NCBI GenBank assembly: GCA_020137815.1
Contig: CM035351.1
Coordinates: 1-64,000 of the forward strand
Origin: Hormiphora californensis
Lineage: Eukaryota > Animalia > Ctenophora
DNA: 64,000 bases
Direction of reading: 5' to 3'
The translations under genes were made by a program, and so were the position numbers. Below the pieces are notes generated by a model, which had not been told where the DNA came from, ran no database searches, and was given only the letters and a program-made list of their open reading frames with translations. Of this stretch, positions 37,301 to 49,300 are shown one piece after another; positions within the stretch are counted from its first letter, which is position 1, and each line of letters starts with the position of its first letter.

Positions 37301-40300
37301 GAGCACTAAATCGAGGGCCTATAATCATTAGTTAAGGAGCTAATTGGCTAATTAGACCCACACGCACTATATTTCAGGATTTTGAAGAAATATAACCCTC
37401 CAACCCGCCTAGCAACCACTCAGGGTGCCTTATAAGTCGTCCAGGACATCTTAAAATCCACCCAGCCCTCTCAGATGCCTCCTATACACCGCAACGTACT
37501 CCCAGGAAGTACCAGATACCCCATAGACACACTTAGATAATAAACAGGTCCTCCAAACATTCATTCTAAACCTTCTTAAATTAGATATACAGTCGGATTT
37601 AGAGAACAAAACCCTTTCCCCCAAGGATGCCACTAAATCGGGGTCCGACTGTATATATCCACTTAGCAATCTTAGCAGTCTTATAACTTTTCAAGGGGCT
37701 CCCAAAACACCAGCCCATTTCAGATATATCTTCTAGACACCGCAATGTTCTTGCTCAGGACTCAGGTCATTCACAAAGCTATCCAGATAGCTATAGCTCC
37801 CGCCCCCATTCTATCCTTAAAGTCTTCTAGGCCTCGTATATATATATTATGTTGTTGAGTCGTATTGATACTACATGGGTCCCAGATCTTAGCACTAAGG
37901 GTTACCTAACTACTTATGCCCAGATCACCAATCTCTTACCAAACACACAGTCTCTGTGACCCAAGATGAAGGAGTATCGAGACGACTAAACAAGGTATGT
38001 CTACGGGGTATCCAAAACTTCCTAGGAATACCTGAGGCATCCAGCCACAAGCGGTTATGGGAAGGTTTAGGATATGGGAAGGTTTAGGATGAATATTTGA
38101 GGACTTGTTTAGTATCTAAGTGTGTCTATGGGGTATCTGACACTTCCTGGGAGTACGTTGCGGTGTCTAGGAGGCATCTGAGAGGGGCTGGGTGACTTTT
38201 AGGATGCCCTGGACGAGTTATAAGGCACCCGGAGTGGTGACTAGGCGGATATGGGAAGGTTTAGAATGAATATTTGGGGGGGGGCCTGCCGCAAGAATCT
38301 CATGCCTCATTGGCGATTTTCGGGGTAGCTGGGATTTTTGAGATTTTCGATTTTTGGCTAAAAAACGTGGGATTTTTGAGATTTTTGAGGCAAATTTGCG
38401 ATTTTTCGGGGAAAACCCGCAAATTTTTCTCAAAAATCTCATAGAAAGGAAAAATTTCCGTTCGAAATTTTGGAATAGAAACAATCCTTGTGTTTTTCTA
38501 CCAAAAATCAAAATTCTGAATAGAAATTTTCCTTGTGTTCTAGTACAAAAGTTAATGTGAAGCTAAAACATGAAATCTACCTATTTAAATTACTAAACTG
38601 CTATTATGATTCAGTTTTAAGCTAAAAAATATGTCGAAAAACTGAGTATTGGCAGCCAAAATTTTGCCAATTTACCACAAAAATCTCAAAAATCTCAAAC
38701 GTAATTGAGCAAATTTTCCCAAAAATCTCAAAAATCTCATCGGCCGAAAAGAGGGTAGCTGAGATTTTTGCGGCAGGCCCCCCCCCCCATATTTGGAGGA
38801 CCTGTTTAGTATCTAAGTGTGTCTATGGGGTATCTGGTACTTCCTGGGAGTACGTTGCGGTGTATAGGAGGCATCTGAGAGGGCTGGGTGGATTTTAAGA
38901 TGTCCTGGACGACTTATAAGGCACCCTGAGTGGTTGCTAGTGCGTGTGGGTCTAATTAGCCAATTAAATCCTTAACTAATGATTAGAGCAAAAACTAATT
39001 GAAATTAGTTCGCCAGAAAGGTGGCCCATTTTGAACTTACTCCTTCATTTCCGTCACCTTTGAGTTGAGGCTTCAAAGACATTGAGGTATCCGTAAACTT
39101 TTCCGCCTTCAACTCAAAGGTGACGGAAATGAAGGAGAAAGTTCAAAATGGGCCACCTTTCTGGCGAACTAATTTCAATTAGTTTTTGCTCTAAATTTGT
39201 ACTCTTTTTTTGGTCGTTTGAGGTCATTTATGACCTCAAACAACTAAGATAATTGTCAAACAAAGTGTTCAAATGTAATTCAAATGTATCCTGGGATGTA
39301 GGAAGCTGATTTGACGAAATTTTCAAAATTCGACGTCGTTTTGACGTCATGACGTCACATGTGACGTCACGACGACGTAAAAAATTATGACAGACTATTC
39401 GGCCGATTAAGCACTAAACGTGTGGAAAGTTTTAAAGGCAGCAGTAGTCAAGAAATGAAGTTATTGCACGAAATGTGAGTTTTTGTGTAGATTTTCACAT
39501 CAAATTTTTAAGTTCCGACGCGTTTTAAGGTCTAAAAATGACAAGTTAGAGAAAATCACCTTATAGTATCTGAAAGTTCAGACAATTTGCCACTAACGAT
39601 TTTCCGTCAAATCAGGAATTGGAAAATGTCTTGAGGGTGCTAGAGGCGTTTGAAAATATTTGGTCTGAGATTTTTAATGACGTCACTTTGTGACGTCATT
39701 ATGCCCGTCATAGTGGACATTTTCACTTGGAACCTTAACTAATGCATGCCCCGAACGATTTCCTAACGGATAAAACTTAGTTCAACTCTCTAGCTAGTAT
39801 GGTTCAAGCTACAAGTGTTACACAGTGAAGCGTCTATAGCTATATATATATATATAAAAACTTCCGTTGTTTTTAATTTGTATAAACTGCTCGCCGGCTA
39901 ACCCCGTGCTAGAGCTCTCTGTTGATCTCGGACCAATGGACAGGATATTTATCTTGTCATCACTCCACTAATCTCGCTATAATGCAATGCTCCTTCAATT
40001 TATTTGTTGTAGAGCTCTCTTGTGGATCTGAGGACACGTACGACGTCTGGTTTTAAGGAACTATGATCAAAATGGAATACAGATTACACAGTCCAAGAAA
40101 GGGAATTATGGTTGAAGTACTTTAAAACTGGGGAATCTCGATGTCCAAGATACGAAGATGTGACGAAATGGTGCAACTAAATCTAACTAGGAACGATTGA
40201 CTGACTGTTTTTATGAAGGAGTCATACTTTATCCCAATTCATTCTCATTTTGATCTTTGTCTACTGATGATTGGTGCCTCCTCGTGGGGCATCATGAAAC

Positions 40301-46300: not shown

Positions 46301-49300
46301 ACCTGATCTTGATGATTTGATTCACTTGCATCATCTTGACTGGGTTAGAACAGCGGGAGCCTTAACGCTTCAGTTAATTCATCTTTATGAAACGATTTTC
46401 CCTGGTTCAGGTTGCGATAATCTGATTCTGAAGAGAAGGGTGTTACTAAACGCTAAAGAATTCGGTAATTTATTGATCCGAAAGCATCCCAACACATTAA
46501 CTTATTAGGTATCGCTTGTGCTTTCAAAACTTCACAAACTTCAGTACTTTTAACTTTCTAATTTTGTTTTGTCTTATGGTTTTGATCAACACCATTTAAA
46601 GCTACGTTTTCTGCTGGCCCAGTGCTGGGAATGAATCCTTATTTTGCCATTATCTTGCTTTCAAACGTTTTTGCGCTAAAAGTTATGTGTCCAATAGTCA
46701 AATAACCACCTTTTGTCCCTCTTTTGTCGCACTGTTTGGGTATTTGACCCTTGAACACAGCTTTTAGCGCAAAAGCATCTGAAAGCAAGATAATTGCAAA
46801 AGAAGGATTCATTTCCAGCAGAAATTGTAGTCTAAAAAGGCTTTCATCAAGACTGCAAAGTGGCAAGAAAAAGTTAGAAAAAGTTGTAAAGTAAAATTTG
46901 AAGAAGTCTGAAAAGTTTAGAAAACAGGCGAGACCCAAAAAAAATCTGTAGGTATTGAGATGCTTTTTGGGGTGGCGCGCGGTTTTTTTAGCAACGCGCA
47001 TGTAAGCGCGGATTTTATTTGCGCGTCACATCGCGCGCGCACGCAAAAAGTAGCAAGAAGTGGCGGGAGGTAGCCAAAGTTCGCTAAAATTCGCACGGTT
47101 TCCAGCCGCTGGCTAAAGAGCCAGGTTAACTTTTCGCCCATTTTCGAGCCATCATATTGCAGCTATTACTGTCTTCTAAACACTCATTGGTACAGAAATT
47201 CCAAATTTTAGTTCCAAAACTATACGGGACGGTAAATAGGGAAGGCTACTGGGGAATCTCGATGTCCAAGATACGAAGATGTGACGAAATGGTGCAACTA
47301 AATCTAACTAGGAACGATTGACTGACTGTTTTTATGAAGGAGTCATACTTTATCCCAATTCATTCTCATTTTGATCTTTGTCTACTGATGATTGGTGCCT
47401 CCTCGTGGGGCATCATGAAACATGTGTATAGACCTTAAAAACTTCCGTTGTTTTTAATTTGTATAAACTGCTCGCCGGCTAACCCCGTGCTAGAGCTCTC
47501 TGTTGATCTCGGACCAATGGACAGGATATTTATCTTGTCATCACTCCACTAATCTCGCTATAATGCAATGCTCCTTCAATTTATTTGTTGTAGAGCTCTC
47601 TTGTGGATCTGAGGACACGTACGACGTCTGGTTTTAAGGAACTATGATCAAAATGGAATACAGATTACACAGTCCAAGAAAGGGAATTATGGTTGAAGTA
47701 CTTTAAAACTGGGGAATCTCGATGTCCAAGATACGAAGATGTGACGAAATGGTGCAACTAAATCTAACTAGGAACGATTGACTGACTGTTTTTATGAAGG
47801 AGTCATACTTTATCCCAATTCATTCTCATTTTGATCTTTGTCTACTGATGATTGGTGCCTCCTCGTGGGGCATCATGAAACATGTGTATAGACCTTAAAA
47901 ACTTCCGTTGTTTTTAATTTGTATATATATATATATTATACCAAAACTAATTGAAATTAGTAGGCCGGAAAGGTTGCCTTACGATTTGAGCTATCTTAGG
48001 CACCGTAACTTTCACGGGGTATAGACAGGTTACAGATGCTTCGCTTATCTTCAAAAGGGAATTTACTGGTACCAAAGGTAGCTCAAATCGTAAGGCAACC
48101 TTTCCGGCCTACTAATTTCAATTAGTTTTGGTATAATATGCGTCATTTTTGGGATTTTTTATCCATGTAGATTTAGTAGAATAGGTACAGAGAGGTTAGA
48201 GTCGCGAAATTGAGAAATTTTCATTTTTGACGTCATTTTGACGTCATAAAATGACGTCACGACGTTGTAACGTCAAAATTATGACGTCATATTATCGGGC
48301 CCACCTAGATGAAGATACTGACCAAGTTTGAGATCGATTGGATGAGATTTGAGTCCGCTATAGCGAAAAAACCGATAACGTCATATCTGTTTTTAAACAG
48401 TCATAACACTTTAGACGCGTTTTAAGACCCTTATACGCCTGGTTTTCAAAATTCACAATATAGTTTCTGAAAGTTCAGACAATTTTCTTTCCATGATATA
48501 GTCTTGGATTTTCGATTAGAATCCGTCTTCAGGGTGTAAATTGAGCTCAAAGAATTTTGGTTAGAGTCTGAAAAATGACGACTTTAAGACGTTCTGTAGG
48601 ACGTTCCTGTCGATGAAAAGAGACCCCACTACGACTAATGCACACACATCCAGTAGATCTACCAGCTGTGAAAAGATGAAGTCTCTATCTCTTTTCGTTT
48701 GGCGTCACATTCACTTATAAAAAGCGTCTCTCCTACTGCGCGCGCGCGCATGCCTGTTACACTGAATTTAGGGCAAATGGGACATGTCTGTAACTTCGGT
48801 TCCAGATGAGATAGAGACTTGAAATTTTGAACTTGAGTCAAAGACCCCAAGCCGGGTAAACATTCCAAATTTCAAGCCAAACGGATGAAAGGGAGCCACG
48901 CTATAGCCTTCTGAAATCTGGATTTTCAGCTAAACACCCATAAAACGTATAACTGCGTTTCTGGCGGCGCTTTTTGAGGGGGGGGGGGGGAATGGCAACC
49001 TTTGCGCTTGCCAGCGCAGTGATATATCTATCTATCGCCACACTGAATTTTCTGTTTTGGGGGTGGTGTCATAACTTGCGACCGGAATGAGCTAGCTACT
49101 TGAAATTTTTACCGTCAGTAGAGGTCTATGTGAAGCTTCTTAGTACCAAATTTCAGCCTCCTAGCTTATCTGGTTCCGGAGTTAGGAGGGGTCGAAAAGT
49201 GCCAAAATGGGCTAAAACTTCAAAATTGTTATATCTACGCTGTTGGCAAGCGGGCCCACTTTTTCGGGAAAAGTTTTAGGGGGAGGGGATGGGGCCACCT

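What the first reader, a model, noticed from the sequence alone, without database searches (positions are those of the whole stretch)
39856..47924. Retrozyme-like array: 460-nt tandem units, each with a minimal type I hammerhead ribozyme
Seen: five near-identical non-coding 460-bp units plus ~28 nt, flanked on both sides by (TA)n. Each has stem I GTCTA/TAGAC, a CTGATGA box, a 9-bp stem II, GAAA, a very short stem III with palindromic ACATGT and a GTA cleavage triplet (cut after 40307 in copy 1). The array begins ~8 nt downstream of the cleavage phase. Established: minimal type I hammerheads with palindromic stem III cleave as dimers and mark Penelope-like elements and metazoan non-LTR retrozymes, which yield circular RNAs. 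Inference: a young retrozyme family copied by rolling reverse transcription of a ~460-nt circRNA, probably in a ctenophore, where I know of no description.
Basis: partly seen in the sequence, partly recalled or inferred. Interest (0 to 1): 0.9.

Follow-up and report, generated by a model that had tools for sequence, protein, structure and literature searches.

The report
Hammerhead-bearing parasite of a Penelope-like retrotransposon
The 460-base tandem repeat is a real, young, non-coding mobile element that carries a small hammerhead-ribozyme motif and copies itself by borrowing the enzymes of a 2.35-kb Penelope-like retrotransposon in the same genome; this kind of element is already known in other animals, but I found no report of it in comb jellies.

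Summary
There are 5.06 near-identical 460-nt non-coding units, each with an exact minimal type I hammerhead motif, lying between (TA)n runs.

The circular-RNA mechanism is untested. At least 38 dispersed loci show a fixed 3' end 38 nt past the predicted cut, variable 5' truncation and 8-17-bp target duplications. These are marks of target-primed reverse transcription.

[quoted passage not shown] Its 3' end has the same ribozyme core, helix III, cut site, tail and terminus. Helices I and II differ but still pair.

Covariation supports all three helices and the dimer-forming helix III. Rfam models miss both ribozymes, and the usual G10.1-C11.1 pair is absent, so cleavage still needs a bench test.

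RNA evidence is weak: only fragmentary marine metatranscriptome contigs. The assembly statistics match the ctenophore Hormiphora californensis.

This is a new member of a known kind, the non-LTR retrozyme or non-autonomous PLE derivative. An earlier scan note (s1-872997) records a similar 481-nt element elsewhere in this genome.

The parts
39841..39856 (.). Left (TA)n run, the target microsatellite at the 5' junction of the array
   Evidence: Read directly.
39855..40314 (+). Unit 1 (460 nt)
   Evidence: 100% identical to units 3 and 5.
40315..40774 (+). Unit 2. It differs from the other units at unit positions 11, 83 and 95; two of the three variant states were seen in other subfamilies.
   Evidence: subfamily states.
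40775..41234 (+). Unit 3
41235..41514 (+). Unit 4, left part (unit positions 1-280), ending in the first target-duplication copy ACTGGGGA (41507-41514)
41515..47247 (.). Later insertion of 5,733 bp that splits unit 4. It has 11-bp inverted ends TTCCCTATTTA / TAAATAGGGAA near its termini and carries microsatellites and a 352-aa minus-strand ORF. It is not part of the ribozyme element.
   Evidence: Removing it together with one duplication copy restores a unit identical to unit 1.
47248..47435 (+). Unit 4, right part, beginning with the second ACTGGGGA copy (47248-47255)
47436..47895 (+). Unit 5
47896..47925 (+). Terminal 30-nt partial unit. With the 8 nt before it, it forms the 38-nt tail past the last cut site, which is the family's fixed 3' end (...AATTTGTATA).
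   Evidence: The partner PLE ends at the homologous position.
47922..47937 (.). Right (TA)n run at the 3' junction
40259..40312 (+). Hammerhead motif 1, predicted cut after 40307
40719..40772 (+). Hammerhead motif 2, predicted cut after 40767
41179..41232 (+). Hammerhead motif 3, predicted cut after 41227
47380..47433 (+). Hammerhead motif 4, predicted cut after 47428
47840..47893 (+). Hammerhead motif 5, predicted cut after 47888
38983..39854 (.). Host repeat that contains the targeted (TA)n. It opens with an 86-bp-armed hairpin at 38983-39194 and continues at 49022-49322. A 97-98% identical copy on contig 4 holds an 11.2-unit array at the same (TA)n.

Best explanation
The array is one insertion of a non-coding, non-autonomous retroelement of the animal non-LTR retrozyme type. 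It is a short derivative of a Penelope-like element (PLE) and is mobilised in trans by the reverse transcriptase and GIY-YIG nuclease of a 2,351-bp Hydra-like PLE in the same genome.

Shown here:
- The family is dispersed over at least 38 loci.
- Copies have a fixed 3' end 38 nt past the hammerhead cut site, variable 5' ends and 8-17-bp target duplications.
- The 3' junctions show TA microhomology with the target, and several targets are (TA)n.
- The unit shares the PLE's ribozyme core, helix III, cut site, 3' tail, 3' terminus and first bases.
- Helices I and II differ in sequence between unit and PLE but stay paired.

Inferred:
- The nuclease nicks AT-rich DNA.
- The reverse transcriptase starts inside the RNA at ...UUUGUAUA, helped by pairing with the nicked TA-rich end.
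- Several units are copied in one event, either from a multimer, from a circle, or by jumping from the 5' end of one self-cleaved monomer to the 3' end of another.
- The hammerhead works as a dimer through its self-complementary helix III and trims transcripts to unit length.

This copy landed in a (TA)n inside another repeat, antisense in an intron of a Kv-channel gene. A DNA transposon later split it.
For: - Dispersal, 5' truncation and the fixed 3' end.
- Target duplications in 16 of 26 loci with the canonical 3' end, median 13 bp.
- Units within an array are identical (6 of 6, 3 of 3 and 2 of 2) while subfamilies differ by about 6%.
- PLE-style inverted and tandem arrangements and a 30-40-nt tail, as described for PLEs in PMC8557442.
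- The partner PLE has a GIY-YIG hit about 290 nt upstream of a second hammerhead family.
- The PLE repeats with a 2,351-bp period.
- Its nearest Atlas clusters carry HTH_animal, RVT_1 and GIY-YIG.
- Collinear shared blocks, same terminus.
- Covariation: 87.5% of cells pair in register against 30-53% when slid. C-G changes to U-A in 16 distinct sequences. Loop 3 changes from U.G to A-U in 15, which keeps helix III self-complementary. Four of five helix I pairs change on both sides.
- The dimer fold is recovered by co-folding.
- The hammerhead region varies less than the rest of the unit (0.013 against 0.032).
- Literature on the class: PMC7229834, PMC4209133 and bioRxiv 10.64898/2026.07.22.740005.
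Against: - No Rfam hammerhead model matches the unit or the PLE ribozyme, even on stretches of about 100 nt at E up to 10.
- The base of helix II is U.U in the unit and A-U in the PLE. Typical PLE minimal hammerheads have a bulged base plus G10.1-C11.1. This pattern is reported in PMC4209133 and seen in 83 of 121 metagenome examples with the same GAAACAUGUGUA module.
- PLE minimal hammerheads cleave poorly in vitro (PMC4209133).
- No direct RNA evidence exists from the organism itself. There are only short, low-depth marine metatranscriptome contigs, and some cross the cut site uncut.
- The monomer is not unusually structured (z = +0.64).
- Outside the ribozyme and tail, sequence shared with the PLE is short (12-13-nt blocks).
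- The covariation alignment was fitted to the model. Many unpaired helix I cells come from copies truncated at the 5' end.
Confidence: 0.85

Rival explanations
1. Rolling-circle reading: a self-cleaved 460-nt monomer is ligated into a circular RNA, and the reverse transcriptase runs round it several times, producing the tandem array in a single integration.
For: - Arrays of 2-6 units are identical within a locus but differ between loci.
- Internal priming 38 nt past the cut does not need a free RNA 3' end.
- Circular RNAs are documented for animal retrozymes (PMC7229834).
- Metatranscriptome contigs cross the cut site.
Against: - No circle has been shown.
- Unit 2 of this array differs at 3 positions, two of which match states seen in other subfamilies. 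One circle cannot produce that.
- Untemplated bases sit exactly at the cut site in several copies (L041 +7, L087 +3, L053 +1). This looks like joining of RNA ends during copying.
- The contig 4 array has 7 distinct unit sequences among its 11 full units.
- Contigs crossing the cut site are equally expected from uncut multimers or from DNA.
Confidence: 0.3
2. The hammerhead-like motif does not cleave. The conserved 3' block (motif plus tail) is only the recognition and priming signal for the PLE reverse transcriptase, as in a SINE-LINE 3' end partnership. The arrays arise from multimeric transcripts or from later unequal crossing-over.
For: - Rfam hammerhead searches were negative for both the unit and the PLE.
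- There is no G10.1-C11.1 pair.
- PLE minimal hammerheads are weak in vitro.
- About 40% of independent copies are just the motif plus tail (about 87 nt), in both the unit family (22 of 82) and the PLE (21 of 51). This block therefore behaves as the minimal mobilised module.
Against: - All core bases are invariant across families, while the three helices covary. That pattern is expected of a ribozyme, not of a plain protein-binding site.
- The change that preserves the self-complementary helix III is specific to the double-hammerhead fold.
- 5' ends and untemplated bases coincide with the predicted cut site in L041 and L050.
Confidence: 0.15
3. It is ordinary satellite DNA that grew locally by unequal crossing-over and spread by DNA duplication, with a relic ribozyme motif inherited from a PLE end.
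For: - The window array and the 11.2-unit array on contig 4 lie in 97-98% identical copies of the same host repeat, at the same (TA)n.
- The 2026 preprint proposes local amplification of PLE ends into tandem repeats.
Against: - At least 16 loci have their own target duplications, and flanks are unrelated.
- 5' ends are variable while the 3' end is fixed.
- Near-identical copies lie on different chromosomes.
- The two arrays in the shared host repeat have different 5' junctions, at unit position 1 and position 342.
Confidence: 0.04

Closest known systems
Animal non-LTR retrozymes (Cervera and de la Pena 2020, PMC7229834; Li, Clavereau and Pollet 2026 preprint, 10.64898/2026.07.22.740005)
   Same: - Non-coding, low-GC tandem units of a few hundred nt, each with a type I hammerhead.
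- No LTR, primer-binding site or polypurine tract.
- Target duplications longer than 4 bp.
- Co-occurrence with PLEs, and descent from their ends.
   Different: - The unit (460 nt) lies just above the usual 150-450 nt range.
- The ribozyme is the minimal PLE type with an open helix I, not the canonical type I with loop 1-loop 2 contacts.
- The monomer is not unusually self-paired.
- Circular RNA has not been shown.
- The host would be a ctenophore, which those papers do not cover.
Minimal hammerheads of Penelope-like elements (Cervera and de la Pena 2014, PMC4209133)
   Same: - Short helix I (5 bp) and long helix II (9 bp).
- A 2-bp helix III with a palindromic loop, predicted to act as a dimer.
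- Location near the 3' end of a PLE.
- The GAAACAUGUGUA module recurs in 121 metagenome examples.
   Different: - No bulged base between positions 9 and 10.1.
- No G10.1-C11.1 pair: U.U in the unit and A-U in the PLE.
Hydra clade of C-terminal EN+ PLEs (Craig et al. 2021, PMC8557442), compared with the partner element
   Same: - Under 3 kb with a single ORF.
- C-terminal GIY-YIG domain.
- CxCX5C linker, and CxxC and CxH motifs around the conserved E and N.
- A hammerhead near the 3' end.
- Insertions in (TA)n or TA-rich DNA.
- A 30-40-nt tail, and tandem and inverted copies.
   Different: - Not placed on a tree here.
- The DKT and RWK motifs were not clearly identified.
- The clade was reported from Cnidaria, Mollusca, Echinodermata, Arthropoda and a hemichordate, not from Ctenophora. 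For ctenophores that paper lists only Naiads.
SINE-LINE partnerships that share a 3' end
   Same: A short non-coding element carries the 3' end of an autonomous retrotransposon and is copied by target-primed reverse transcription, with 5' truncation and target duplications.
   Different: - No Pol III head and no poly(A) or simple-repeat tail.
- Priming is internal.
- Insertions are multimeric.
- The shared module is a ribozyme.

Membership tests
Hammerhead ribozyme, type I, minimal PLE variety | Conserved core CUGAUGA ... GAAA ... UH at the cut site | tested here: met
   The core is exact in all 5 window copies and invariant across 49 distinct genomic sequences and in the PLE family.
Hammerhead ribozyme, type I, minimal PLE variety | Three helices around the core, kept by compensatory change | tested here: met
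   87.5% of cells pair, against 30-53% when slid. Nine pairs change on both sides. Helices I and II differ entirely between unit and PLE yet still pair. Caveat: the alignment was fitted to the model.
Hammerhead ribozyme, type I, minimal PLE variety | Short helix III with a palindromic loop that allows a double-hammerhead dimer | tested here: met
   ACAUGUGU and its variant ACAAUUGU are both self-complementary in register. The change from U.G to A-U occurs in 15 sequences. Co-folding returns the dimer.
Hammerhead ribozyme, type I, minimal PLE variety | G10.1-C11.1 pair and a bulged base after A9 (PMC4209133) | tested here: not met
   The unit has U.U and the PLE has A-U, and neither has a bulge. 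The usual form is seen in 83 of 121 metagenome examples.
Hammerhead ribozyme, type I, minimal PLE variety | Match to the curated Rfam hammerhead models | tested here: not met
   No hit at gathering score or at E up to 10, even on 101 nt. RF00163 finds nothing above its cut-off in the genome. The PLE's own ribozyme is missed as well, so the models appear not to detect this variety.
Hammerhead ribozyme, type I, minimal PLE variety | Self-cleavage at the predicted site | not testable with these tools
   Only indirect scars are available. 5' ends fall at the cut site in L041 and L050, and untemplated bases lie at the cut site in L041, L087 and L053.
Animal non-LTR retrozyme | Tandem non-coding units of about 150-450 nt, each with a type I hammerhead, low GC, no LTR/PBS/PPT | tested here: met
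   460-nt units, no ORF over 44 aa, GC 39.8%. No terminal repeats other than the unit itself.
Animal non-LTR retrozyme | Dispersed copies bearing the marks of retrotransposition | tested here: met
   At least 38 loci. Target duplications in 16 of 26 loci.
Animal non-LTR retrozyme | Expressed as unit-length linear and circular RNA | tested here: inconclusive
   Only marine metatranscriptome contigs of 82-359 nt at depth 2-7. These cannot show RNA ends, strand or circularity.
Animal non-LTR retrozyme | Highly self-paired monomer RNA (commonly noted, not strictly defining) | tested here: not met
   Minimum free energy -104.5 kcal/mol against a shuffle mean of -108.7, z = +0.64.
Non-autonomous derivative of a Penelope-like element | Shares its 3' end with an autonomous PLE in the same genome | tested here: met
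   Same core, helix III, cut site, tail (43 identical bases in the aligned 60-62 nt after the cut) and 3' terminus. A 12-mer is also shared upstream.
Non-autonomous derivative of a Penelope-like element | PLE insertion anatomy: 5' truncation, partial tandems, inverted copies, 30-40-nt tail | tested here: met
   (L042, L061, L062 and L065 carry inverted pieces). Description of PLE anatomy in PMC8557442.
Hydra clade of PLEs (the partner element) | Under 3 kb, single ORF, C-terminal GIY-YIG, CxCX5C linker, CxxC and CxH around E/N | tested here: met
   2,351-bp period. GIY-YIG at residues 443-486 of 551. CNCKDKGSC, CDLC and CRH read in the translation.
Hydra clade of PLEs (the partner element) | Placement with Hydra families on a reverse-transcriptase tree; DKT and RWK motifs; loss of CCHH | not tested
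   No reference Hydra proteins were at hand. The motifs could not be assigned with confidence by reading alone.

The most novel reading that the evidence does not exclude
The copies record the mechanism.
- Some insertions begin exactly at the predicted cut site, and some carry untemplated bases exactly there.
- About 40% of independent copies of both the 460-nt element (22 of 82 ribozyme copies) and its PLE (21 of 51) end within a few bases of the ribozyme's 5' edge.

Read together, these would mean three things. The hammerhead cuts in vivo despite lacking G10.1-C11.1. An RNA 5' end, from a transcription start or from processing, abuts the ribozyme. The PLE enzyme starts internally 38 nt past the cut and builds arrays by end-to-end jumps between cleaved monomers, not by circling a circular RNA.

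It would also be the first retrozyme-Hydra-clade PLE pair in Ctenophora. That would place the PLE-hammerhead partnership at the base of animals, unless it arrived by horizontal transfer.
Probability: 0.3. Interest if true: 0.6.

Novelty: new member of a known kind. Interest (0 to 1): 0.45.

Why it matters
Animal retrozymes are thought to depend on Penelope-like elements, mostly from co-occurrence and from similarity of their pseudo-LTRs in vertebrates. Here both partners are young and lie in a small, chromosome-scale genome, so the dependence can be read directly. They share the same ribozyme module, the same tail, the same terminus and the same truncation hot spot, and the target duplications are clear.

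That makes this a compact system for three questions: what the PLE hammerhead is for, where PLE reverse transcription starts, and how tandem insertions are made. It would also extend retrozymes and the Hydra PLE clade to ctenophores. For annotation, Rfam-based scans miss this ribozyme variety.

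Tried and rejected
- Rfam searches were run on the whole window at gathering score, on 10 kb and on 101 nt at E up to 10. RF00163 was run across the genome, and the PLE ribozyme was also tested. None gave a hammerhead hit. I treat this as a limit of the models, because the PLE-linked ribozyme is missed too.
- The search for sequencing runs found no run of the organism that holds the unit as RNA. 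Laying four marine runs gave only fragmentary contigs, with no joints and no RNA ends.
- Folding the monomer gave no excess stability. Folding one ribozyme alone gave z = -1.8, which is unremarkable.
- Pfam found no RVT_1 hit in the PLE ORF at E up to 0.1. The reverse-transcriptase identity rests on the YRDD box read in the translation and on the Atlas neighbours.
- A BLAST census with a 190-nt query scored only the 40 best candidates, so it could not give the distribution of truncation points. Exact-pattern counts replaced it.
- The metagenome scan returned no member of either family, only other minimal hammerheads with the same helix III module.
- Considered and rejected: a coding function for the unit; a plain satellite (target duplications argue against it); the (TA)n flanks as part of the element (most other loci lack them).

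Full report
**1. The observation**

Tandem Repeats Finder reports a 460-nt period at 39855-41514 (3.6 copies, 99% matches). The repeat resumes at 47248 and ends at 47925. The 37-nt stretch from CTGATGA to GAAAC occurs five times without a mismatch, against none in 100 shuffles.

The motif reads GUCUA, CUGAUGA, a 9-bp helix II (UGGUGCCUC / GGGGCAUCA, including two G.U pairs), GAAA, then C-AUGU-G, then UA. The predicted cut follows the A, and UAGAC comes next. The cut sites fall after 40307, 40767, 41227, 47428 and 47888.

Unit 4 is split by a 5,733-bp insertion (41515-47247) flanked by a perfect 8-bp duplication, ACTGGGGA. Removing the insertion and one duplication copy restores a unit identical to units 1, 3 and 5. 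Unit 2 differs at three positions.

The array is therefore 5 units plus a 30-nt partial unit, with (TA)n on both sides. It has no ORF over 44 aa and its GC content is 39.8%.

**2. The family in its genome**

The window is the first 64 kb of contig 2 of a 110.69-Mb assembly of 45 sequences. Thirteen of them are 6.4-10.5 Mb long. The published Hormiphora californensis assembly has 110.6 Mb in 44 scaffolds, with 13 of 6.4-10.3 Mb and the rest under 50 kb (PMC8527503). The match is close. The identification rests on those figures alone and is therefore an inference.

A search with one unit found at least 38 further loci on 11 of the 13 large contigs and on one small one (contig 25). I fetched 37 of them with their flanks and found the following:

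- The 3' end is fixed at unit positions 28-34 (...AATTTGTATA), which is 38 nt past the cut site.
- The 5' ends are scattered along the unit.
- Arrays range from 0.2 to 11.2 units.
- Sixteen of the 26 loci with the canonical 3' end have a target duplication of 8-17 bp, median 13. The duplication usually overlaps the element's last TA or TATA.
- Only some targets are true (TA)n (the window, L031, L041, L050). The others are AT-rich.
- Four loci carry inverted pieces (L042, L061, L062, L065).
- Units within an array are often identical (6 of 6 in L036, 3 of 3 in L039), while subfamilies differ by about 6%.

Together these are the marks of target-primed reverse transcription. They also match the particular anatomy described for Penelope-like elements: 5' truncation, partial tandems, inverted copies and a 30-40-bp tail (PMC8557442).

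**3. The partner element**

A pattern search for CTGATGA, 14-30 bases, then GAAACATGTGTA found 116 sites and none in the reversed control. The sites fall into two families.

The second family reads CTGATGA-AATACAATTT(T)GTATT-GAAACATGTGTA. It lies about 290 nt downstream of GIY-YIG matches found independently. These copies belong to an element that repeats head to tail every 2,351 bp. Its single ORF of about 550 aa has three recognisable features:

- a YRDD reverse-transcriptase box;
- a CNCKDKGSC linker, which fits CxCX5C;
- a C-terminal GIY-YIG domain flanked by CDLC and CRH.

Its nearest protein clusters in the Atlas combine HTH_animal, RVT_1 and GIY-YIG. Small size, domain order, linker, a hammerhead at the 3' end and a TA-rich target all fit the Hydra clade described by Craig et al.. 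I did not build a tree.

Aligning the PLE's 3' ends with the unit shows the following shared, collinear blocks:

- a 12-mer, TTTATGAAGGAG, upstream of the ribozyme;
- CUGAUGA;
- GAAACAUGUGUA;
- the tail AAACTTCC(G)TTGTTTTTA(A)TTTGTA;
- the same 3' terminus inside TTTGTA;
- where copies are tandem, the next bases AAAC(A/T)GCTC.

In the aligned 60-62 nt after the cut, 43 bases are identical.

Helix I is CAGUU/AACUG in the PLE and GUCUA/UAGAC in the unit. Helix II is AAUACAA/UUGUAUU in the PLE and UGGUGCCUC/GGGGCAUCA in the unit. The sequences differ but both still pair.

The 460-nt element is thus an internally replaced derivative of this PLE that has kept both of its ends.

**4. Is the hammerhead real?**

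I built a covariance model from six sequences of the two families and searched the genome with it. I then aligned 60 hits, of which 49 are distinct.

On the hammerhead structure, 87.5% of cells form standard pairs. When the 3' partners are slid by 1-3 columns, only 30-53% do. Seventy cells change on both sides, against 4-12 when slid.

- In helix II, C-G alternates with U-A in 16 distinct sequences, and G.U alternates with G-C.
- In helix I, four of the five pairs change on both sides.
- Loop 3 occurs as AUGU or AAUU. Both ACAUGUGU and ACAAUUGU are self-complementary in register, and the U.G to A-U change (15 sequences) keeps them so.

That last result is what the double-hammerhead (dimer) model predicts. 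Co-folding two copies of the AAUU form returns that dimer, at -38.2 kcal/mol against 2 x -15.3.

The ribozyme region also varies less among loci than the rest of the unit (0.013 against 0.032).

There are caveats:

- The alignment was fitted to the model.
- Many unpaired helix I cells come from truncated copies.
- No Rfam hammerhead model matches either ribozyme.
- The base of helix II is U.U in the unit and A-U in the PLE. Typical PLE minimal hammerheads have a bulged base plus G10.1-C11.1 (PMC4209133).
- In a metagenome scan for the same GAAACAUGUGUA module, 83 of 121 examples had that typical form.
- PLE minimal hammerheads are weak in vitro.

Catalysis here is therefore likely but unproven.

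**5. Scars that bear on the mechanism**

- L041 and L050 begin at TAGACCT, the first base after the predicted cut, directly after a (TA)n run.
- L041 is one monomer running from cut site to cut site, then seven untemplated bases (AGAGAAG) exactly at the cut, then the 38-nt tail. L087 has three extra bases there and L053 has one.
- In whole-genome exact counts, 82 copies hold the 5' half of the unit's ribozyme but only 60 keep the 12 bases upstream of it. The 22 that do not are separate loci. Those I read are copies of about 87 nt, ribozyme plus tail, each with its own target duplication and beginning 0-5 nt before CUGAUGA.
- The PLE shows the same pattern: 51 ribozyme copies, of which 30 keep the 14 upstream bases. 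L088 is one example with a target duplication.

Under even truncation, about 3% of the unit's copies and 0.6% of the PLE's would end in that short stretch. The simplest readings are an RNA 5' end at that point (a transcription start or a processing site) or a block to the enzyme there. I cannot tell which.

These scars fit copying across RNA ends at the cut site, that is, template jumps between cleaved monomers. They do not exclude circles or multimeric transcripts.

**6. RNA evidence**

The only runs that hold parts of the unit are marine metatranscriptomes or runs labelled RNA-Seq whose type is uncertain. Laying four of them gave 13 contig pieces of 82-359 nt at depth 2-7 and 88-99% identity. 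There were no joints and no end pile-ups. Two pieces cross a cut site. This shows presence in seawater nucleic acid. It does not show transcription level, strand, cleavage or circularity.

**7. Context**

Exons of a Kv channel gene (BTB_2 and Ion_trans domains) lie on the minus strand at 34857-35570 and near 52299-52538. The plus-strand array therefore sits antisense in an intron of that gene.

It lies in the (TA)n of a host repeat (38983-39854 plus 49022-49322). A 97-98% identical copy of that repeat on contig 4 carries an 11.2-unit array at the same (TA)n, but with a different 5' junction. This is either a hot spot hit twice or an old shared insertion.

**8. Comparison and novelty**

The class is known:

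- animal non-LTR retrozymes (PMC7229834);
- minimal hammerheads in PLE ends (PMC4209133);
- a 2026 preprint arguing that animal retrozymes are non-autonomous PLE sequences (10.64898/2026.07.22.740005).

This is a new member. Its particulars are:

- the minimal (not canonical) ribozyme inside a tandem retrozyme;
- no G10.1-C11.1 pair;
- a Hydra-like partner;
- unusually legible junctions;
- probably a ctenophore host.

The held library has no retrozyme or hammerhead report for ctenophores. Craig et al. list only Naiads for that phylum. Another first-stage note records a similar 481-nt element elsewhere in this genome.

Noticed in passing
window 41515-47247: A 5,733-bp insertion splits unit 4, with a perfect 8-bp target duplication (ACTGGGGA) and 11-bp inverted ends. 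It holds several microsatellites, a 27-nt minisatellite and a 352-aa minus-strand ORF (44916-45974) with no Pfam family above its cut-off. An 8-bp duplication would suit a hAT-like DNA transposon; this was not tested.
   Followed up: partly
window 38983-39854 and 49022-49322; L128:9153-10000, L129:97-398: The array sits in the (TA)n of a repeat of roughly 1.2 kb that opens with an 86-bp-armed hairpin. A 97-98% identical copy on contig 4 carries an 11.2-unit array at the same (TA)n with a different 5' junction. In the window, a further 1.1 kb (47933-49021, starting with a related 72-bp-armed hairpin) lies between the array and the rest of the repeat.
   Followed up: partly
genome-wide; examples L096, L098, L102, L107, L110, L113-L116, L127 (unit) and L088 (PLE): There is a strong 5'-end hot spot. 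22 of 82 copies of the unit's ribozyme and 21 of 51 copies of the PLE's ribozyme lose identity within 12-14 nt upstream of CUGAUGA. Those inspected are solo copies of about 87 nt (ribozyme plus tail), each with its own target duplication. The cause is unknown: an RNA 5' end there, or an enzyme stop.
   Followed up: partly
L041:880-1010, L087, L053, L052: Extra untemplated bases sit exactly at the predicted cleavage site (+7 AGAGAAG, +3 AAA, +1), with a further small insertion at the junction in L052. In L041 and L050 the insertion's 5' end coincides with the cut site.
   Followed up: partly
window 34857-35570 (-) and 52299-52538 (-): Exons of a voltage-gated potassium channel gene (BTB_2 and Ion_trans) lie on the minus strand. 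The ribozyme array lies antisense in the long intron between them, among several other repeats.
   Followed up: partly
genome, e.g. C7:5328520, C4:2368361, C7:1748849, C2:2121274, C11:5283244: Other GIY-YIG-bearing open frames of 800-1,039 aa, often in tandem or inverted pairs, suggest further PLE families (possibly Naiad-like) in this genome. They were not examined for ribozymes.
   Followed up: no
L131-L250 (metagenome contigs): The module GAAACAUGUGUA recurs in at least 120 metagenome contigs. 83 of the 121 motifs have the classic PLE minimal hammerhead form (a bulged base, G10.1-C11.1 and a covarying 6-8-bp helix II). Many come from a few related sample series, so they probably reflect host animal DNA in those samples.
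   Followed up: partly
window 39011-39167 and 48230-48299: Long perfect hairpins of MITE-like repeats score against plant and animal microRNA precursor models in Rfam, far below gathering scores. These are chance matches to hairpin shape.
   Followed up: no
window 39600-39829: The unique-looking 5' flank of the array (part of the host repeat) is covered at depth 5-9 by contigs of one marine metatranscriptome, with several differences. The host repeat itself may therefore be transcribed or abundant.
   Followed up: no
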